Below, piece by piece: positions 31,250 to 42,908 of a stretch of 64,000 nucleotides of DNA. This DNA comes from Haplodiscus bocki (Eukaryota): NCBI GenBank assembly GCA_965655095.1, contig OZ296649.1:41850001-41914000 (forward strand), in the 5' to 3' direction. The position numbers and the translations under genes were made by a program. Numbering within the stretch: the first letter of the stretch is position 1; each line of letters starts with the position of its first letter. The notes under the pieces were generated by a model. It had not been told where the DNA came from. It was given only the letters and a program-made list of their open reading frames with translations, and made no database searches.

Positions 31250-31790
31250 TTAAGAAACAAGATTTTCCGTCGAAAATTTTTTGTCTCACAGTGTGGAAAA
31301 AGTTCGTAGGGGAATCCTTTAGTGTCTCATTAATTTTGGGTATCGAAAAATGTTAGAGATAAGAGGGGGCGAATCACGATTTTCCCTCGAAATTGTTTCT
31401 GTCTCTCAGTACCGAAACATTTCGTAGAGGAACCCTTCTGTGCTGTGTTTCAGAAACTTTCCGGCAGCGAAAAAGTTTATGGATAAGGGGGAGGGAGGAA
31501 GTATCAAAATTTTCCGTCTAATATTTTTTGTCTCACAGTGCTGAAAATTTTGCAAAGGAACCCTTTATTGTTTCAGTAATTTCGGGTATCGAAAAATGTT
31601 AGGGATAAATCGTAAAAATATTTGTCACGACAGAGACTCGAACCCCGAACCTACTGCTTGATAACGTTGTTGTCCTAACCCTACTGCTGTCATTTATTTT
31701 TAAATAAAAAGAGTTCGTCTGAAAAAAAAGTAAAACGGCCCTACTGAATGAATAATTTTTCTTGCATATTACATATGCAGCGAAAAATAA
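31250..31790 (-). mobile_element. Partial copy of a Helitron-like composite repeat with a tRNA-like segment and ~120-bp internal repeats
   Basis: Reverse-complement homolog of 42090-42908 (shared GCATATGTAATATGCAAGAAAAATTATTCATTCAGTAGG, GGGGTTCGAGTC and TTTTTCGATACCCGAAATT repeats). Confidence 0.6.
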
Positions 31791-32756: not shown

Positions 32757-33356
32757 TAGTATTGTATATGATAATGTGGGAGTTATTCTGAATTTCGAGG
32801 TGCAGTGCGATGTAATATGAAAAAGTAGTAAATGTACCATTCGCTCACGTACCGAATGACATAAGACCACTAAACATAAATTTCGAAGTAATCTCACTAA
32901 CTAAACTTACAATTATCATTAAGTAGTATACATAATTAGTACTAATTGTGCTAATGACAGCCTGAAAGGGATTTGCAATACTATTAGCATTGAAATCAAC
33001 ACCTTCGGCATCTCGACATCACCCAATCCGACCACTCGGTGGCCGTTATGTGTGCCCTTGCTATGCTCGGAGATTCTTACTTGCCCCCATTAGTAACATT
33101 TTTTTATTCGTAAAGACATGCGTTGACTATATTATAACAAAGTTAACGGGTAGTACCTATATAAATTTCAGCCAATCAGAACATTTTGTCTGTACGAGAT
33201 ATAAATTTTATGTTAAATGAGACTCTTTTCAATTTTATGCATAAAATTGTTGATTTTCCATTCTTGTTAATCAACAGAGCCTGTATCGAACAGCTGTTAA
33301 ACTCAACTTGGAACCCTTGCACTGCGATTCATAATGTATGATAATGTGACGACTAG

Positions 33357-35524
33357 TGTCGCACGTGGTGGGGGTAGAGGTATTGCGAACCTATTCTTTA
33401 CTCAGTTGTGCTGGCGTTTGACTCAGTCAGCACTATTATGCTATAGCGACGGTTATTATTTATAAGTCTCATTAGGGTGCCTTGCTTAACGTGCGAACAA
33501 AGGGATTGCGTGAATTCAAGCAAGGACTTGTGAGCTATAAAGAAGAATACAAAAGAATTTTAAATTATAAACAGTGAAAATTCAATATTTTGAACAGTAG
33601 AGGAATCATAACTGCTCGTATGGGAAAGGGGAATTACTCATATGGTCTTTTACGTTAGAAGATGGCATTGATCGTGTTGATGTTGGCTGTTGTTGATTAC
33701 TGCCGATTGCTGATGGTTGCTACTGGTTGCTGGGTGATTGATGGCTACGGCTGGGATACTGCTTCTAGGCGGGAAAGTCTTTGAATACTTTCGAAGAGAC
33801 GATGAGGAATTTCGGCTAAGACAAGTTTTAAAATTGTCTTAGAATATTTCGAGGAGGTGATGAAGAAATTTGACTAAGAGAAGTTTTAAAATTGTCTTAG
33901 AATAATTCAAAGCAGCGATGAGGTAATTTGGCAGAGACATGTTTTAAAATTGTCTTAGAATAATTCGAAGCAGCGATGAGGAAATTTGGCAAAGACAAGT
34001 TATAAAATTGTCTTAGAATAATTCGAAGCAGCGATGGGGAAATTTGGCAAAGATAAGTTTTAAAATTGTCTTAGAAGAATTCGAAGCAGCGATGAGGAAA
34101 TTTGGCAAAGACAAGTTTTAAAATTGTCTTAGCATATTTTCGTTGAGAGGCAACTGGAATCTGGTAAAGACATTACTGAAAATTGTCTTAGAATATTTTC
34201 AAGGAGAGGCAATTGGAATTTGGTAAAGACATTACTGAAAAATGTCTTAGAATATTTTAGAGGAGAGGCAATTGGAATTTGGTAAAGACATTACATAAAA
34301 ATGTCTTAGAATATTTTCGATGAGAGGCGATTGGAATTTGGTAAAGACATTACATAAAAATGTCTTAGAATATTTTCGACGAGAGGCGATTGGAATTTGG
34401 TAAAGACATTATTTAAAAATGTCTTAGAATATTTTCGTTGAGAGGTAATTGGAATTTAGCAAAACAAGATTTAGACTTGTCTTAGAATATTTTCAGTGCA
34501 AAGCAATTGGAATTTGGCAAAGACAAGATTTAGACTTGTCTTAGAATATTTTCAGTGCGAAGCAATTGGAATTTGGCAAAGACAAGATTTAGACTTGTCT
34601 TAGAATATTTTCAGTGCGAAGCAATTGGAATTTGGCAAAGACAAGATTTAGACTTGTCCTAGAAAATTTTCAGAGCGAGAATTAAGCTCTAGAAAATATG
34701 ATGAGAGGAAAGTGGGAGAGAGTTTCGCCTCGGGGAATTAGGCCAGTTGACGGTAGGAAAAGGAATGAATAAAGTGAGAGTACGGGGTATTTATACCCTG
34801 TTATATAGCAATCGAGTAATTGACCAATAGGAAAGCGCCGCAAATATCAATGTCAACGAAGGTTATCTAGTCGGTAGCAATAGTTGAATTTTGGAAAAGG
34901 GACGGTTTCTGCATATTTAACCCATAACTCGGAATTTAGAATAAATTCTAAAGACCATGGAATTAGACGAGGTGAGAATGATCTATGAGTAATGTCAATT
35001 CTCTTTGCCTAAGAACCTCGTGGGGGGTCGTGCATATTTAAGATCCACTCAAGCTTCAGAACCTAAGTTCATCCACGGAACCCGCACACGCCAATGCCGA
35101 AGCTAGCGTCAGTGGACACCGTTTATACTCCGATGGCAAGAGTATAGAATTTGTAGAGGGAAAGAGGAATTTTTTCTAAGTTAGAATGAAAATGGGACTT
35201 GGAATATTTTTGTCCGAAGAGAAGCAGGAAGAGAATTTAGAATAATTTTAACCGAGCAAGAATGGAAAGAAAATAACGTTAAAAGGAAAGGGAGTAAAGT
35301 AAAAGGGAAGAGGAGAGTAATGTAAAGTAAAAGGGAAAGAAGTAAAGCTGCCGTCCGGTAAGCGAGTAAGTCAGTAATATTCAAGCCGCTTTCCTCTACC
35401 AGCTACAAAATGTAGCTAACGCGCGCGTGTCTTTATTTTGTGCGTTGGACCACATTTCAACGCGTTTAGAAATTTTCCTTTTCTTTCCTTTTACATTTGT
35501 TTAAGCGTTAGCTATAACGCGACA
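33357..35524 (-). repeat. 3' LTR (2168 bp)
   Basis: Direct repeat of 38235-40286 with TG...CA termini. Confidence 0.95.
33777..34680. repeat. Tandem array of ~15 x 58/59-bp stem-loop units in the 3' LTR
   Basis: GTCTTAGAATA recurs every 58-59 bp (33836, 33894, 33952 ... 34656); each unit contains AAGACANN-N7-NNTGTCTT. Confidence 0.93.
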
Positions 35525-36956
35525 ACTCACCGGGGTTAAAGGGATAGAAAAATGATTGGGGGGTGCAAGGGAAATAGGTTTAAAAATATAAAGAAGATGT
35601 CGGCAATGCGAGAGCGGTACTTGGTGGTCTCTGCCATCCAGTCGTGTAAATCTAGCATAAGTAAATGAAATCGAATTTTATCGTACCTGGCCAAAACCCA
35701 ACAATCTTCTAGCTGCAATCAAGATGTTAACTGTAAGCTTCGTGTAATCTAACTTTCATCTGCATTCAGTTTAGCGGGAGAAAAGAAAAATAGCTTAATT
35801 CGCCACCGGATTCCCAAGTGGAAAAGGTCTCTCTATTCTGCCAGAGGAATAGCTATGGAGGAATACCGTAATATCAAACCGGCGCTCTGTGGGCACTAAG
35901 ACAGAGTAGGAGCTAAGTTTTTATAGTAGTAGCTCCACTACTTTTAAAACGACGCCGAGATTTTTATAAAGGACGCTGGGTCGAACCCAGTTTCGTCAAA
36001 AAGTGCCAAATCAAATTTGCCTCTTCCGTAACAAGTTTATTAAAGTCAGCCTATTTTCAGGCTGTCTGTCAATGTGACTTGAGATTAATGTAGTCTGGAA
36101 AGCCTCGTCAGGCTTGCAAAAGACGTGTGGGCCCATTAATTATAATTCGGATAGAGGAAGAATAAGTAGTTTGTTCGAGGGTTCTATATTTGATGTGAAG
36201 ATTGTTCCCACTTAGTTAGAGTGAAAGCGGGTGGACTGTTGATCAGTGACACCTCGTGAAATACCCCAAGGTCTTTGTGCGTAATCAAGAGAGTCGTGCA
36301 GGCTTTGGTTTTCCCGTTCTTCCAATTTTCGGGGATATCTAGGGTCACAAAGAGGCTGGCGAAATCTTCTTTTCCAGCTATTTTGGGTATAAGTATCGCA
36401 GCGAGTAGATTCTCAACAATCCGGATTCTGACTTAAAGGCAGTTCCCGTCAGTAATCCAAAAGATGTTAAAATATTGTGCTCTCCTTCAGATGTCATATA
36501 TGTTGTCGAAAGCGTGTAGGGTGTTGATCTGTGACACCTCGTGGCTTGCAACGAGTAGATTCTCAACAACCCCCAAATCTAACTTTGGAGAATGCTTCTG
36601 GCAGGTTTTCAAAAGCTGGATAGAAAAGTTCTAAAGATTGTCCATCATGAAAATGTGCTCCCAATGAAGTATCTTTGGTTTCCACTTGCCGCGAAGAGTT
36701 AGTTCTGGGTTGGTTTTTGGTGTGGCCAGGGCATTATGGTCGATTATCTTGCGGTTCAAGAATTCCAGGTAATTAATTGCGTGGATAATCTTGGCTGACA
36801 AGATTTTTGTATGCATGCCTAATGCTGGTTATTTGGATGAGAAGAATAGATATAGGATTAGACGTGGGCAATAGAGAAGGTGCAATCAAATAAAGTGAGA
36901 ATATAAAAAGTTTAAAAAGGATATAAAATGGAAATAAAAAAGAGGCTTTGGAGGCT

Positions 36957-38128
36957 TCAGTAGCCTAAAGGAAGTGAGTCCGATGATTCACCGTCAGACT
37001 CGCCGATTGATGTAACTTCTGCCATATTGAAGCTCATGCCATTGTCCCTTGGAAGGAGTCTTCGTTCGGGAGGAGTAAACTGTTGATCTTCATGTTGCCA
37101 TTTTGCTTCCTCATTAGAGAGCCGTTCGATCGATGGGCTGCTTCTATCATCCACTTCAAGAAAATTGTTCATGGCGTCGTTGTTTGGTGGTTTAGGATTG
37201 AATTGCTCAATGGAAGAGTCCTTTATGGGACTGATTTCCCTTTTGGACCACATATCGTTGCGTATTTTTCGTACTTCTTCATCTCGCATTTTTTTGCGAC
37301 ACCAATTTAATTTATGTCCATTTTTATGGCAGTAATTACAGAATCGGGTAGTTTTTTGTCTTCCCTGTTGATTGGGATGAAAAGTCCGTGAAGTTACTGC
37401 TACGGCGCTGACGTGATATTCTTTCAACTCTGATCGAAGGTTTTTTTTATCTCCTGTCCAAGTGTTGCCAATTCTGCTTTGGTTTGTGCTTCATGAGATA
37501 GAAAAGTCGAGGATGCCTCTAGTATCAAATCTTTTTGAATTATCTGGGCACAGAAATCGTTCCACGTGGCGTTTGGACGCTCCATCAGATACTCTTGAGC
37601 TTTCCGTTGGAGATATCTAGGTCTAAGTCCTCGCAGACTGTAGTCCATGTACCTCTGTCTCCTTTGTCTGCCTTGTGCTGCTCGTTCTGCATTTTGTTGA
37701 GCGGCCTCAATACCGTTCATATCATCGGGCCAGCCCTTGTCAACTGTCCGTTTGATACGTTGTAAGAAGTTCCGAATTTCTTCTCCATCTCCTCTAATAC
37801 AAGATTCCACTTCCATTCGGTATCGAAATTTATTTCGTCCATCTGAAAATCTAGTGATGAAGGTTGTTCGAACATCCTCCCAGGTTGTTGCGTTGGTTAT
37901 ACTGCTCTCATACCACTCAGCGGCTGGTCCTCGGAGTAAAGATGAAAACAGCGCTTTTTTTCTGAAAGTGTAGTTTGCAAGTTCACCCGCATCTCCAGGT
38001 GCGTCTCCAAGAGCAAAGTTGATTTTTCGTTCGATTAGTTGAATGAAAGATTCGGCATCTTGATCGAGATCTGTGCCAGAAAATTTGTCCACGGCCAAGT
38101 CGGGATAGGCAAGATGAGCAGCAGCCAT
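36957..38128 (-). CDS. gag: Gag (capsid-like domain plus CCHC zinc knuckle), split by a frameshift in an A8 run at ~37441-37448
   Basis: The 234-aa ORF has KFSG and LRGPAAEWY...TWEDVRTTFITRF (retrotransposon Gag signature); the -1 frame continues NLRSELKEYH...CNYCHKNGHKLNWC (CX2CX4HX4C) to the stop at 36957; about 390 aa if joined. Confidence 0.85.
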
Positions 38129-38213
38129 TGTAATAATTATCAGAACAACATAAACCGTACAAATATAGCTCCAGCAAAAACGGATTTTAGTTAAAAGGGT
38201 TGCTCACAGATGG

Positions 38214-38231
38214 GCCTCACTGGTCGCACCA
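38214..38231 (-). other. Primer-binding site (tRNA 3'-end complement)
   Basis: Minus strand reads LTR-CA aac TGGTGCGACCAGTGAGGC; its complement GCCTCAC-TGGTCGC-A-CCA has tRNA T-stem, acceptor and CCA geometry. It resembles elongator Met or Ile-TAT 3' ends; identity unresolved. Confidence 0.8.
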
Positions 38232-38654
38232 GTTTGTCGCACGTGGTGGGGGTAGAGGTATTGCGAACCTATTCTTTACTCAGTTGTGCTGGCGTTTGAC
38301 TCAGTCAGCACTATTATGCTATAGCGACGGTTATTATTTATAAGTCTCATTAGGGTGCCTTGCTTAACGTGCGAACAAAGGGATTGCGTGAATTCAAGCA
38401 AGGACTTGTGAGCTATAAAGAAGAATACAAAAGAATTTTAAATTATAAACAGTGAAAATTCAATATTTTGAACAGTAGAGGAATCATAACTGCTCGTATG
38501 GGAAAGGGGAATTACTCATATGGTCTTTTACGTTAGAAGATGGCATTGATCGTGTTGATGTTGGCTGTTGTTGATTACTGCCGATTGCTGATGGTTGCTA
38601 CTGGTTGCTGGGTGATTGATGGCTACGGCTGGGATACTGCTTCTAGGCGGGAAA

Positions 38655-39440
38655 GTCTTTGAATACTTTCGAAGAGACGATGAGGAATTTCGGCTAAGAC
38701 AAGTTTTAAAATTGTCTTAGAATATTTCGAGGAGGTGATGAAGAAATTTGACTAAGAGAAGTTTTAAAATTGTCTTAGAATAATTCAAAGCAGCGATGAG
38801 GTAATTTGGCAGAGACATGTTTTAAAATTGTCTTAGAATAATTCGAAGCAGCGATGAGGAAATTTGGCAAAGACAAGTTATAAAATTGTCTTAGAATAAT
38901 TCGAAGCAGCGATGGGGAAATTTGGCAAAGATAAGTTTTAAAATTGTCTTAGAAGAATTCGAAGCAGCGATGAGGAAATTTGGCAAAGACAAGTTTTAAA
39001 ATTGTCTTAGCATATTTTCGTTGAGAGGCAACTGGAATCTGGTAAAGACATTACTGAAAATTGTCTTAGAATATTTTCAAGGAGAGGCAATTGGAATTTG
39101 GTAAAGACATTACTGAAAAATGTCTTAGAATATTTTAGAGGAGAGGCAATTGGAATTTGGTAAAGACATTACATAAAAATGTCTTAGAATATTTTCGATG
39201 AGAGGCGATTGGAATTTGGTAAAGACATTATTTAAAAATGTCTTAGAATATTTTCGTTGAGAGGTAATTGGAATTTAGCAAAACAAGATTTAGACTTGTC
39301 TTAGAATATTTTCAGTGCGAAGCAATTGGAATTTGGCAAAGACAAGATTTAGACTTGTCTTAGAATATTTTCAGTGCGAAGCAATTGGAATTTGGCAAAG
39401 ACAAGATTTAGACTTGTCCTAGAAAATTTTCAGAGCGAGA
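38655..39440. repeat. Tandem array of ~13 x 58/59-bp stem-loop units in the 5' LTR
   Basis: Same units as 33777-34680 with two fewer copies. Confidence 0.93.
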
Positions 39441-39524
39441 ATTAAGCTCTAGAAAATATGATGAGAGGAAAGTGGGAGAGAGTTTCGCCTCCGGGAATTA
39501 GGCCAGTTGACGGTAGGAAAGGGA

Positions 39525-39590
39525 ATGAATAAAGTGAGAGAGTACGGGGTATTTATACCCTGTTATATAGCAATCGAGTAAATGACCAAT
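39525..39590 (-). promoter_or_regulatory. Putative LTR promoter (CCAAT box, TATA boxes, pyrimidine-rich initiator)
   Basis: Minus strand: ATTGG (39590-39586), TATATAA (39569-39563), TATAAATA (39557-39550), then CTCACTTTATTCATTC about 20-35 nt downstream. Confidence 0.55.
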
Positions 39591-40949
39591 AGGAAAGCGC
39601 CGCAAATATCAATGTCAACGAAGGTTATCTAGTCGGTAGCAATAGTTGAATTTTGGAAAAGGGACGGTTTCTGCATATTTAACCCATAACTCGGAATTTA
39701 GAATAAATTCTAAAGACCATGGAATTAGACGAGGTGAGAATGATCTATGAGTAATGTCAATTCTCTTTGCCTAAGAACCTCGTGGGGGGTCGTGCATATT
39801 TAAGATCCACTCAAGCTTCAGAACCTAAGTTCATCCACGGAACCCGCACACGCCAATGCCGAAGCTAGCGTCAGTGGACACCGTTTATACTCCGATGGCA
39901 AGAGTATAGAATTTGTAGAGGGAAAGAGGAATTTTTTCTAAGTTAGAATGAAAATGGGACTTGGAATATTTTTGTCCGAAGAGAAGCAGGAAGAGAATTT
40001 AGAATAATTTTAACCGAGCAAGAATGGAAAGAAAATAACGTTAAAAGGAAAGGGAGTAAAGTAAAAGGGAAGAGGAGAGTAATGTAAAGTAAAAGGGAAA
40101 GAAGTAAAGCTGCCGTCCGGTAAGCGAGTAAGTCAGTAATATTCAAGCCGCTTTCCTCTACCAGCTACAAAATGTAGCTAACGCGCGCGTGTCTTTATTT
40201 TGTGCGTTGGACCACATTTCAACGCGTTTAGAAATTTTCCTTTTCTTTCCTTTTACATTTGTTTAAGCGTTAGCTATAACGCGACACTAGGGATAATACT
40301 TTTAGGAGAAAATTTGCGCTTTTTACCGGGTAAGAACAAAAATAGCAGGCCCTGTTAATCAACAGAATTTCTAGCTAACTTGAGAGTAGTCATCGTTGCA
40401 ATCGGACCAATAGTTTTTGAGCTTCATTTCATTTAAAAAAACATCCATTTTTCCTGAAATACAAGTCAAAAGTCAACATAAAGTATGAAAAGAGAAGTCC
40501 CTATAATGCAACTACCGAGTAGCTGAATTAGCTCCGGATGGCTTTATTTCGATTAAAATTTGATGAGAAAATCATTGCTCAAAAATCTTTGGGAATAAAA
40601 TTTCGACATCCTTTTCATGAGCCCCATCGTTTATTCATCGAATTTTTTCCCCAAACTAGTTTTCTTCACTTCGCACGGGCTTGCGCTTCTAGTGCGTTTC
40701 AGAAATTGCACTTTCTGTATATACAGACAAAAAGTTTTGCACACAATAATGAAAAAGCCACACTGGCTTAAAGAGAGTGGGGAATTAATATCGACAGAAA
40801 TTTTGGAAAGTTGTAAAACTTTGAGAAATTGCTCCAAAAACTGGAATTCGCCAAAAATTATGAACTCATTTTCAAGTTGTTTTTTTAACCACTTTGATGA
40901 AGTTACAATAATTAATTTTGAGATTTGACAAAAATATCACTTTCAAACA

Positions 40950-42089: not shown

Positions 42090-42908
42090 TATTTGTATTT
42101 TTCGCCGCATATGTAATATGCAAGAAAAATTATTCATTCAGTAGGGTCGTTTTTCTTTTTTTTTCAGAGCAGAATTGCCAACTTTTTAAATTCAAAAATA
42201 AATGACAGCGGTAGGCTTAGGACAGCAAGGTTCTCAAGCTGTAGGTTTGGGGTTCGAGTCACTGCCCTGCCAAAATTTTTTTACGATTTATCCCTTACAT
42301 TTTTCGATACCCGAAATTAGTGATACAGTCAGGGGTTACCCTACGAAATTTTTCGGCGCTACGAGACAAAAAAATTCGACGGAAAATCGTCAGCCCCCCC
42401 CCCTCTTATCTCTAACTTTTTTCGATACCCGAAATTAGTGACACACTGAAGGGTTCCCTTACGAAATTTTTCGGCACTGTGAGACAACAAATTTTCTATA
42501 GAAAATCGTGATATTCCCCTCATAGGCATAAAATTTTTCGATACCCGAAATTAATGAAACACTGAAGGGTTCCCCTACGAAAATTTTCGGTACTGTGAGA
42601 CAAAAAGTTTCCGACGGAAAATATTGATACCCCCCTCTCTTATCCATAACATTTTTCGATAACGGAAATTTTCTGAAACACAGAAGGGTTCCTCGACGAA
42701 ATTTTACGACACTGTGAGACGAAAATTTTGCAAGGGAAAATCGTGATACCTTTTTGCATAAATTACAGAAATCAGTGGTCGAATTGATTTGTCAAACTCT
42801 TCGAAAACTAATATCAAAACAGTAGTTTTGTTTTTAATCGTTTGCAAAAATTGATCAAAATATTGGTAGTTGGGCGAAAAATATGCCGGTGCTAGCCGGC
42901 CGTCTTGT
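42090..42908 (+). mobile_element. Helitron-like non-autonomous composite repeat (tRNA-like segment, ~120-bp internal repeats, 3' hairpin plus CTTG|T)
   Basis: 3' end GCCGGTGCTAGCCGGC-CGT-CTTG|T; internal repeats TTTTCGATACCCGAAATTA...GGGTTCCCCTACGAAA; no TIR or TSD seen. Confidence 0.55.

What the first reader, a model, noticed from the sequence alone, without database searches (positions are those of the whole stretch)
33777..34680. Covarying stem-loop array in the transcribed part of the LTR
Seen: each 58/59-bp unit holds a 23-nt inverted repeat of fixed length whose arms change together: AAGACAA-gttttaaaa-TTGTCTT, AAGACATT-acataaa/actgaaa-AATGTCTT and AAGACAAG-atttaga-CTTGTCTT. The loop sequence drifts while pairing is kept, and the variants form three ordered blocks. 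The array lies downstream of the putative TATA, so it would be in R/U5 and the 5' leader of the genomic RNA (copy at 38655-39440). Inference: selection on structure, giving a multivalent RNA hairpin scaffold (Gag nucleation or packaging, helper Pol capture, translation control) or an array of dimeric protein-binding DNA sites. Together with gag-only coding this is the best candidate for an undescribed system in the window.
Basis: partly seen in the sequence, partly recalled or inferred. Interest (0 to 1): 0.82.

Follow-up and report, generated by a model that had tools for sequence, protein, structure and literature searches.

The report
Palindrome-bearing repeat array in retrotransposon LTR
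Each long terminal repeat of a young gag-only retrotransposon carries 13-15 copies of a 59-base unit holding a short palindrome; the array is real and shared by related elements, but the claimed structural covariation rests on very few events and no RNA data show that it is transcribed.

Summary
Window 33777-34680 is a 58/59-bp tandem array of 15 units; its copy at 38655-39440 has 13. Each unit carries a 23-nt palindrome, and the units form three ordered blocks.

- **Promoter.** The gag-sense strand has a CCAAT-TATA-Inr module about 86 nt upstream of the array. Its geometry is kept in several diverged LTR families, so transcription through the array is plausible. No RNA data exist.
- **Covariation.** Only the two innermost pairs change, reflecting 2-3 events inherited by block duplication. 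RNAalifold and pair counts give no significant signal.
- **Across families.** The 6-bp arms AAGACA/TGTCTT and the flank TAGAAT are invariant in sequence (about 19,800 genomic sites). A second arm type, AAGTC/GACTT, is also complementary.

My best reading is a promoter-proximal LTR repeat module like the gypsy/ZAM/Idefix/rover leader repeats, expanded in the gag-only derivative. An RNA or ssDNA hairpin role is not excluded.

The scan noted similar LTR palindrome arrays elsewhere in this genome (s1-385867, s1-382583, s1-359407).

The parts
33357..35524 (-). 3' LTR of the element (2168 bp), TG...CA ends (TGTCGC.../...GCGACA)
   Evidence: Self-BLAST of the window and direct reading.
38235..40286 (-). 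5' LTR (2052 bp). It differs from the 3' LTR outside the array by 3 substitutions and one 2-nt indel.
33353..33356 (.). Target-site duplication CTAG; the partner is at 40287-40290.
33777..34680 (.). 58/59-bp tandem array of the 3' LTR: 15 palindrome-bearing units plus a leading half unit without a left arm (33777-33817).
33818..34130 (.). Block A: 6 units, palindrome AAGACAAGTTTTAAAATTGTCTT (7-bp stem)
34167..34425 (.). Block B: 5 units, AAGACATT-N7-AATGTCTT (8-bp stem). The first unit is the mixed form AAGACATT...AATTGTCTT.
34461..34660 (.). Block C: 4 units, AAGACAAG-ATTTAGA-CTTGTCTT (8-bp stem)
38655..39440 (.). The same array in the 5' LTR, 13 units. It lacks the units at 34322-34380 (B) and 34464-34522 (C) and has no mismatches.
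34763..34831 (-). Predicted sense core promoter P1: CCAAT box CCTATTGG 34824-34831, TATAAATA 34788-34795, Inr-like TCATTC 34763-34768 (A+1 about 34766). The copy in the 5' LTR has TATA at 39550-39557 and Inr at 39523-39528.
   Evidence: Motif prediction only.
33453..33464 (-). TATAAATAATAA near the LTR 3' end: a second TATA-like site or, more likely, a poly(A)-signal region. A relative has AATAAA about 15 nt upstream of the aligned spot. AGTAAA lies at 33397-33402.
   Evidence: Inference.
34897..35212 (-). LTR segment conserved at 88-92% with the env-bearing and other sister families. It contains the 8-bp inverted repeat TTTAGAAT/ATTCTAAA.
35160..35330 (.). Decayed remnant of the array that the env-bearing relatives carry at this LTR position (TTCTAAGTT...GGGACTTGGAAT)
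38213..38231 (-). Primer-binding site TGGTGCGACCAGTGAGGCC, 3 nt inside the 5' LTR
   Evidence: the same site is found in autonomous relative L033.
36957..38128 (-). gag, in two overlapping frames in this copy: capsid part 37424-38128, CCHC-knuckle part 36957-37427

Best explanation
The array is a promoter-proximal tandem-repeat module of the LTR. It is inherited within one clade of Ty3/gypsy-type, retrovirus-like elements of this genome and is strongly expanded in their gag-only derivative.

Shown:
- Each 58/59-bp unit carries the invariant 11-mer TGTCTTAGAAT (sense strand ATTCTAAGACA) and a partial inverted copy, (CT)AAGACA.
- The loop and part of the spacer vary freely.
- Unit number changes faster than point substitutions accumulate.
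- Homologous arrays occur in sister families.

Inferred:
- The array lies just downstream of the sense-strand start site, so it is in R/U5.
- It acts mainly as a reiterated cis-regulatory module, a set of DNA sites for a host factor, in the manner of the gypsy, ZAM, Idefix and rover leader repeats.
- The few paired changes arose by block duplication of 2-3 events, possibly by template-switch correction of a quasi-palindrome, rather than by sustained selection on an RNA fold.
For: **Anatomy**
- Complete minus-strand element with TSD, PBS and gag.
- The LTRs are about 99.8% identical outside the array, yet the arrays differ by two whole-unit indels.
- 5 of 8 LTR pairs in the genome differ in unit number; copies hold 10-36 units, median 15.

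**Conservation**
- Arms and the TAGAAT flank are 90% or more conserved across 42 units from at least 6 families, while loop columns vary.
- AAGACA-N11-TGTCTTAGAA occurs 19,823 times in the genome, against 2 for the reversed control.

**Sister families**
- Env-bearing elements of about 18 kb (gag-PR-RT-RH-IN-fusion glycoprotein; their gag is 84% identical to ours) carry 3-5 units in the same orientation to the coding strand.
- More distant gag relatives (75-76% identity) have no array, so it is accessory.

**Position**
- The CCAAT-TATA-Inr module is kept in geometry across families, and arrays start +70 to +105 after it. One LTR has two such module-plus-array pairs.
- Arrays also occur upstream of the module or elsewhere in the LTR in some families. 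That fits a position-tolerant DNA element.

**Precedent**
- 19 of 49 D. melanogaster LTR-element 5' UTRs are tandemly repeated, and some bind host proteins as insulators or enhancers (PMC8872304).
- A 151-bp leader repeat is present once in retroviral rover variants and 3-4 times in derived retroelement variants that have a changed expression pattern (PMC12992720).

**Weak fold**
- Single hairpins are -3 to -8 kcal/mol.
- There is no significant covariation and no Rfam match.
Against: - No binding factor is known and no motif library was available, so 'protein site' is an analogy.
- The inverted symmetry is kept at three different arm spacings (outer spans of 21, 27 and 32 nt). A rigid dimer site does not predict this; a hairpin does.
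- A second arm version, AAGTC...GACTT, changes both arms together. Mixed arms exist only at decay level: 161 and 95 sites, against about 19,800 and about 1,800.
- In our family the outer pair is lost while inner pairs are gained, so the stem stays at 7-9 bp. This hints at a constraint on pairing.
- The start site is predicted, not measured.
Confidence: 0.4

Rival explanations
1. The array is transcribed as part of a long R/U5 and works as nucleic-acid hairpins, either in the RNA or in the single-stranded cDNA. It would be a multivalent scaffold for Gag/NC binding and packaging or dimerisation, or a set of R-region hairpins that help minus-strand transfer. The gag-only derivative would have expanded it to compete for the machinery of its autonomous relatives.
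For: - The predicted sense start site lies 86 nt upstream of the array.
- Both arms change together in the AAGTC/GACTT version, and there is no family-level mixed type.
- Pairs 7/17 and 8/16 are gained in blocks B and C where the outer T-A pair is lost.
- Symmetry is kept at variable arm spacing.
- Families that share the array have the closer gag: 84% identity against 75-76%.
- The gag-only family has the most units.
Against: - The covariation tests are not significant.
- The invariant stem is 6 bp and AU-rich, at -3 to -8 kcal/mol.
- The arms are conserved in sequence, and conservation runs on asymmetrically into TAGAAT.
- Broken-stem units were propagated in several copies, for example AAGACTTT...AATGTCTT nine times.
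- In some families arrays lie upstream of the promoter module.
- The leader would be about 1.4 kb with 12 upstream ATGs, which is not depleted (17 expected from composition).
- Neither strand shows a preference for G-U pairs.
Confidence: 0.25
2. The array is a functionless minisatellite. A 59-bp segment that happened to hold a short palindrome was amplified by reverse-transcriptase slippage, by misaligned strand transfer in a repeated R, or by unequal exchange, and it hitch-hikes with a successful family. The arm complementarity is kept or restored by template switching within the quasi-palindrome, not by selection.
For: - Unit number is hypervariable, even between the two LTRs of one young element.
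- Local satellite-like expansions exist: 36 units in L026 and a 3-unit higher-order repeat in L056.
- The B-type change is a dinucleotide change (AG to TT) that makes the left arm a perfect copy of the right arm. That is the footprint expected of template switching (mechanism in PMC8794818).
- Close gag relatives do without any array.
Against: - The arms and the 11-mer stay invariant between families whose loops and spacers have diverged by about 30%.
- The module keeps its place next to a conserved promoter module in several families.
- Neutral drift with concerted evolution would homogenise whole units, not just these columns.
Confidence: 0.2
3. The functional transcript is antisense to gag (window plus strand), as the reader's TATA at about 33535 implies. 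The array would then act in an antisense RNA or as a source of small RNAs.
For: - There is a TATAAAG on the plus strand at about 33535.
- The plus-strand RNA folds more stably, -225.7 against -151.1 kcal/mol.
- Some wobble-compatible variants (G-T at 7/17 in the D type; T-G at the outer pair in B) pair only on the plus strand.
Against: - No Inr sits at the right spacing after that TATA.
- Other variants are wobble-compatible only on the sense strand, for example A/C at 7/17 in L050.
- There are no RNA or small-RNA data.
- The stems are too short for Dicer-type processing (established knowledge).
Confidence: 0.05

Closest known systems
Tandem-repeat leader (5' UTR) modules of Drosophila Ty3/gypsy endogenous retroviruses: the gypsy Su(Hw) insulator, and the ZAM, Idefix, Tirant and accord repeats (PMC8872304)
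   Same: A polymorphic array of short units just downstream of the transcription start of an env-bearing Ty3/gypsy lineage and its derivatives. Copy number varies between copies. The known examples work at the DNA level by binding host proteins.
   Different: Here the array lies inside the LTR (predicted R/U5), not after the PBS. The units carry a conserved inverted repeat. No binding protein is known, and no sequence similarity to those repeats was tested.
rover 151-bp leader repeat expansion that accompanies the retrovirus-to-retroelement transition (PMC12992720)
   Same: More repeat copies in the derived element than in its env-bearing relatives: here 10-36 units in the gag-only family against 3-5 in the env-bearing ~18-kb relatives sampled.
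   Different: A change of expression pattern is shown for rover and is unknown here. The derivative here has lost pol as well as env.
Enhancer repeats in U3 of retroviral and plant LTRs (MLV 72/75-bp repeats, Tnt1 BII boxes; own knowledge) and tandem repeats in LTR retrotransposons that seed satellites (PMC7004042)
   Same: Tandem units inside a retroelement's non-coding region, variable in number, able to expand into longer arrays (L026, L056).
   Different: The predicted position is downstream, not upstream, of the core promoter. The units have a palindromic core.
R-region hairpins of retroviruses (HIV-1 TAR and poly(A) hairpins, used in transcription and minus-strand transfer; own knowledge)
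   Same: If the predicted start site is right, these are stem-loops in R, present at both ends of the genomic RNA.
   Different: The known cases are one or two stable, well-covarying hairpins. Here there are 13-15 weak 6-8-bp hairpins without significant covariation.
TR-GAG / non-autonomous gag-only LTR retrotransposons (own knowledge; described in plants)
   Same: The host element encodes gag only, between LTRs, and is abundant.
   Different: That class says nothing about LTR repeat arrays. This element is in a genome the first-stage notes treat as animal, and it has 2.1-kb LTRs.

Membership tests
LTR retrotransposon (host element) | Two direct LTRs with TG...CA ends and a flanking target-site duplication | tested here: met
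   LTRs 33357-35524 and 38235-40286; ends TGTCGC.../...GCGACA; TSD CTAG.
LTR retrotransposon (host element) | PBS next to the 5' LTR and gag on the same strand | tested here: met
   PBS 38213-38231 and gag 36957-38128, both on the minus strand; the PBS is shared with autonomous relative L033.
LTR retrotransposon (host element) | Polypurine tract upstream of the 3' LTR | tested here: not met
   The sense strand just before the 3' LTR reads ...CCCTTTAACCCCGGTGAGT, which is not purine-rich. This remains unexplained.
Tandem-repeat array (minisatellite) | Head-to-tail units of fixed period, more than chance | tested here: met
   TRF period 59, 14.8 and 12.8 copies, scores 760 and 629.
Structured RNA element supported by covariation | Several base pairs kept through independent changes on both sides, above phylogeny-aware controls | tested here: not met
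   Pairs with a double change: 3 against 3.1 and 4 against 2.8, reached by 38 of 500 shuffles. RNAalifold covariation term +0.08.
Structured RNA element supported by covariation | Thermodynamically stable local fold | tested here: inconclusive
   Single hairpins are -3.1 to -7.8 kcal/mol. The whole-array z-scores of -6.5 and -7.1 are expected for any repeated palindrome.
Structured RNA element supported by covariation | The region is transcribed | not testable with these tools
   No RNA runs hold it. Only a motif-level promoter prediction is available.
Known Rfam family | Match to a curated covariance model | tested here: not met
   0 matches at E of 1 or less over 33000-40600, both strands.
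gypsy/ZAM/Idefix-type leader repeat (insulator or enhancer) | Tandem units between the transcription start and gag in a Ty3/gypsy element | tested here: inconclusive
   The array lies +86 to +990 after a predicted Inr, about 520 nt upstream of the gag ATG. The start site is not measured, and the array is inside the LTR rather than after the PBS.
gypsy/ZAM/Idefix-type leader repeat (insulator or enhancer) | Binding of a host protein; enhancer-blocking or enhancer activity | not testable with these tools
   Needs EMSA or pull-down and reporter assays.
Dimeric transcription-factor site array | Two identical half-sites at fixed spacing | tested here: inconclusive
   The half-sites are invariant within the 59-bp arrays (27-nt outer span). 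Related arrays keep the symmetry at 21- and 32-nt spans.

The most novel reading that the evidence does not exclude
A clade of retrovirus-like elements carries, in a very long R region, an array of short hairpins whose arms (two complementary 'alleles', AAGAC/GTCTT and AAGTC/GACTT) are read as structure by the element's own Gag/NC or by reverse transcription (packaging, dimerisation or strand transfer). The gag-only parasite has multiplied the hairpins three- to five-fold to outcompete its autonomous, env-bearing relatives for their enzymes.
Probability: 0.15. Interest if true: 0.75.

Novelty: new variant of a known kind. Interest (0 to 1): 0.38.

Why it matters
If the array is a cis-regulatory or RNA module, it marks how a very successful non-autonomous element (about 20,000 motif copies in a 1.5-Gb genome) differs from its env-bearing relatives. 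The difference is more copies of one short palindromic unit placed right after a conserved promoter. That gives a simple, testable handle on how parasitic derivatives of endogenous retroviruses gain an advantage.

The conserved promoter-plus-array module could also serve to annotate start sites of this LTR clade. As it stands, the finding is an ordinary kind of LTR feature with one unusual trait, a conserved inverted repeat.

Tried and rejected
- **RNA evidence.** Two run searches found only four runs of one study, none on record as RNA. Laid on 35000-40400 they gave thousands of short contigs over the whole element and its flank, which is how genomic DNA of a high-copy repeat behaves. No starts or ends were reported, so no start site or poly(A) site could be mapped.\n- **Retrocopies.** A search for LINE-type retrocopies of the LTR transcript (AGTAAA region followed by poly(A)) found 0 hits.\n- **Rfam.** No match.\n- **Close gag relatives (L031-L033).** They have no arrays and no regularly spaced palindromes, so they gave no covariation data.\n- **AGTGA-N13-TCACT arrays.** This lead from earlier notes proved real but belongs to an unrelated element: no BLAST match and no shared PBS. 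I did not use it as covariation evidence.\n- **ESM Atlas on gag.** It gave no taxon, so the organism stays unknown to me.\n- **Whole-array folds.** The strongly negative z-scores are rejected as evidence, because any set of repeated palindromes gives them.\n- **A second TATA-like site near the LTR end (33453-33464).** It is equally conserved among copies, so conservation among copies cannot decide between candidate start sites.\n- **Failed calls.** One fuzzy-regex script timed out.
Full report
**1. What is there**

Window 33777-34680 is a tandem array with a 58/59-bp period. TRF reports 33806-34673, 14.8 copies, 87% matches. A second copy at 38684-39433 has 12.8 copies.

The two arrays lie in the two LTRs of one element: 33357-35524 and 38235-40286. 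The LTR ends read TGTCGC.../...GCGACA, and the element is flanked by a 4-bp duplication, CTAG.

Outside the array the LTRs differ by three substitutions and one 2-nt indel in 1,264 aligned bases. Inside it they differ only by two whole-unit indels (34322-34380 and 34464-34522) and no mismatch. So this is a young insertion, and unit number changes at least as fast as point substitutions accumulate.

**2. Orientation**

The only coding sequence is on the minus strand. An ORF at 37424-38128 matches Pfam Retrotrans_gag (E 4.5e-8). It is followed, in another frame in this copy, by a CCHC-knuckle ORF at 36957-37427.

On that strand a primer-binding site, TGGTGCGACCAGTGAGGCC (38213-38231), lies 3 nt inside the right-hand LTR. 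An autonomous relative has the same LTR end and PBS on its gag strand (L033: gag 76% identical, followed by RT-RNaseH-integrase).

The element is therefore minus-oriented. No polypurine tract is evident before the 3' LTR. I leave that unexplained.

**3. The palindromes and their covariation within the family**

The array matches at least 40 places in the 1.5-Gb genome, out of 2,525 first-look candidates. I extracted 453 units from 30 copies.

All copies show the same three ordered blocks:
- A: AAGACAAGTTTTAAAATTGTCTT
- B: AAGACATTACTGAAAAATGTCTT
- C: AAGACAAGATTTAGACTTGTCTT

Unit numbers range from 10 to 36, median 15. They differ between the two LTRs of one element in 5 of 8 pairs.

The block pattern therefore predates the family's burst, so the many 'covarying' units are copies of very few events. 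On 142 distinct units:
- Only pair 7/17 (A-U 79, U-A 51) and pair 8/16 (U-A 55, G-C 25, unpaired 61) change on both sides.
- The number of pairs with a double change is 3, against 3.1 in shuffles. Only the cell-counting measures, which relatedness inflates, exceed the shuffles.
- Mixed units exist at block borders (AAGACATT...AATTGTCTT; AAGACAAG...AAATGTCTT).
- Units with a broken stem were propagated, for example AAGACTTT...AATGTCTT nine times.

Single hairpins are weak, at -3.1 to -7.8 kcal/mol. The whole-array z-scores of -6.5 and -7.1 are what any repeated palindrome gives. Rfam has no match.

**4. The array is older and wider than this family**

The pattern AAGACA-N11-TGTCTTAGAA occurs 19,823 times in the genome, against 2 for the reversed control. 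Sampling these sites showed homologous 59-bp arrays in several sister LTR families with other loops:
- D: AAGACAGAATTTRGAATTGTCTT
- E: AAGACACAATTTGGAATTGTCTT
- F: AAGACAAGTTTTGAARYTGTCTT
- G: AAGACAAGTTTAGGAAATGTCTT

The D family is an element of about 18 kb with gag, protease, RT-RNaseH, integrase, a Monjiviricetes-type fusion glycoprotein and a MATH-domain ORF. All of these lie on the strand opposite GTCTTAGAA, as in our element. Its gag is 84% identical to ours. It carries 3-5 units.

Gag relatives at 75-76% identity have no array at all. The array is thus an accessory LTR module of one sub-clade, and it is largest in the gag-only derivative.

Across 42 units from these families:
- The arms, and the flank TAGAAT to the right of the right arm, are at least 90% conserved.
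- The inner pairs 7/17 and 8/16 are unpaired in 20 and 34 units respectively.
- An outer C-G/T-A extension (CTAAGACA/TGTCTTAG) is present in most sister units but lost in our A, B and C types.
- Formal tests stay negative: 4 pairs with a double change against 2.8 (38 of 500 shuffles), and RNAalifold keeps only the 6-bp stem at -3.5 kcal/mol with a covariation term of +0.08.

**5. What speaks for pairing after all**

- **A second arm version exists.** TTCTAAGTC-N13-GACTTAGAA has a 9-bp stem and is the first unit of the D-type arrays. CTAAGTCA-N5-TGACTTAG occurs in 49-bp arrays of two other families. Both arms carry the A-T to T-A swap.
- **Mixed arms are rare.** Genome-wide the complementary versions number about 19,800 and about 1,800 sites (3,619 strand hits). 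Mixed arms number 161 and 95, which is the level expected from decay. No family-level mixed type was seen.
- **Symmetry survives changes in spacing.** It is kept at outer spans of 21, 27 and 32 nt. That fits a hairpin better than a rigid dimer site.
- **Stem length is roughly held.** Our B and C types gained inner pairs where the outer pair was lost, keeping 7-9 bp.

These are few events. Template switching within a quasi-palindrome can also produce paired changes in one step (PMC8794818). The B-type AG-to-TT change, which makes the left arm an exact copy of the right arm, has that look.

**6. Is it transcribed?**

No RNA run holds the sequence. The four runs that do hold it behaved as genomic DNA contigs and gave no starts or ends.

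On the sense strand the LTR has CCTATTGG (34824-34831), TATAAATA (34788-34795) and TCATTC (34763-34768). In most copies the TATA sits at -31 of the Inr A.
- TATAAATA is intact in 26 of 30 copies and TCATTC in 28 of 30, across two sub-family versions of the spacer.
- The same three motifs, with the same spacing but different intervening letters, recur in 10 modules of at least 5 LTR families.
- In ours, L049 (two modules, each followed by an array) and L052, arrays begin +70 to +105 after the Inr.

This is good motif-level evidence for a real sense promoter just upstream of the array. It would place the array in a long R/U5 of about 1.3 kb.

Three points count against that, or complicate it:
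- The leader to the gag ATG would be 1,398 nt with 12 upstream ATGs, against 17 expected from composition.
- A second conserved TATA-like site lies near the LTR end (33453-33464). I read it as more likely a poly(A) region, because the D family has AATAAA about 15 nt upstream of the aligned spot.
- In some families arrays lie upstream of the module or elsewhere in the LTR.

I put the chance that the array is in the genomic RNA at about 0.6.

**7. Reading**

Shown:
- A real, hypervariable LTR minisatellite with a sequence-conserved inverted repeat.
- It is shared by a clade of retrovirus-like elements and expanded in their gag-only derivative.
- It sits next to a conserved promoter-like module.

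Inferred, with my estimate for each:
- It works mainly as a reiterated cis-regulatory module: 0.4.
- It works as RNA or ssDNA hairpins: 0.25.
- It is a passenger minisatellite: 0.2.
- It acts on the antisense strand: 0.05.

The closest known things are the tandem-repeat leaders of Drosophila gypsy-group elements. There, 19 of 49 5' UTRs are repeated and several bind host proteins (PMC8872304). The rover leader repeat is another: it is expanded in derived retroelement variants with an altered expression pattern (PMC12992720). Tandem repeats inside LTR retrotransposons that seed satellites are also known (PMC7004042); here L026 (36 units) and L056 (a 3-unit higher-order repeat) show the same tendency.

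**8. Verdict**

The strand and the TATA were misread. 'Transcribed' is plausible but unproven, and 'covarying stem-loops under selection for structure' is not supported statistically. This is a new variant of a known kind of LTR feature, of moderate interest.

Earlier notes of the scan describe what are probably the same or similar arrays elsewhere in this genome (s1-385867, s1-382583). They also describe an unrelated AGTGA-N13-TCACT array (s1-359407), which I confirmed exists.

Noticed in passing
G000:C1:17602-17925 (L034 1501-1824); also C1:11200010-11200298 and C1:7657471-7657956: An unrelated element carries 23-nt palindromes AGTGA-N13-TCACT, mostly about 66 bp apart, with very diverged spacers. 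There are 3,335 sites per strand against 1,784 for the control. Some are perfect 11+1+11 palindromes with different inner arms (AGTGAGGTGCA-C-TGCACCTCACT against AGTGAGYTCTA-N-TAGARCTCACT), which is clearer covariation than in my array. It has no BLAST match to my element and does not share its PBS.
   Followed up: partly
L043-L045 (G000:C1:19060000-19089999): An LTR element of about 20 kb (LTRs of about 2.5 kb set 18.3 kb apart) encoding gag, protease, RT-RNaseH, integrase, a Monjiviricetes-type fusion glycoprotein (in two ORFs) and a MATH/TRAF-like ORF. Its gag is 84% identical to the gag-only element's, so it is a candidate autonomous relative. Its PBS differs from ours.
   Followed up: partly
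L056 (G000:C1:1046000-1053000) and L026 (G000:C58:32379-36277): Satellite-like expansions of the same unit: 20 A-type units in a 3-unit (175-bp) higher-order repeat, and an array of 36 units in which the A and B blocks recur.
   Followed up: no
window 31258-31789 and 42096-42750: The LTR element is bracketed, a few kb away on each side, by inverted copies (about 80% identity) of a 118-bp tandem repeat. It may be nested in a foldback-like or other repeat-rich element.
   Followed up: no
window 34897-35212: This is the only LTR segment kept at 88-92% identity with the env-bearing and other sister families, and partly with L033. It contains the inverted repeat TTTAGAAT-TT-ATTCTAAA, whose ATTCTAA core resembles the array's conserved ATTCTAAGACA.
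   Followed up: partly
window 33480-33530 (minus strand): An 8-bp inverted repeat, CCTTGCTT...AAGCAAGG, about 33 nt apart near the LTR 3' end. It is conserved as CCTTGC...GCAAGG in the D family, where AATAAA follows it. It may be a poly(A)-region hairpin of R.
   Followed up: no
window 38620-39343 (table 2): Summed contig word depth over the array relative to the rest of the LTR is several-fold higher in runs X2-X4 (sample S2) than in X1 (sample S1). This may be an assembly artefact or a real difference in array abundance between samples.
   Followed up: no
window 35525-35600: The stretch next to the 3' LTR is purine-rich on the plus strand, which is the antisense strand, so the expected polypurine tract is missing on the sense strand.
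   Followed up: no
L049 2930-3262 (G000:C1:19028929-19029261): A 60-bp repeat (5 units) in a sister LTR with a longer imperfect palindrome, AAGAC-AA-TTT-T-GC-AG-GC-G-AAA-AA-GTCTT. It follows a second copy of the promoter-like module.
   Followed up: partly
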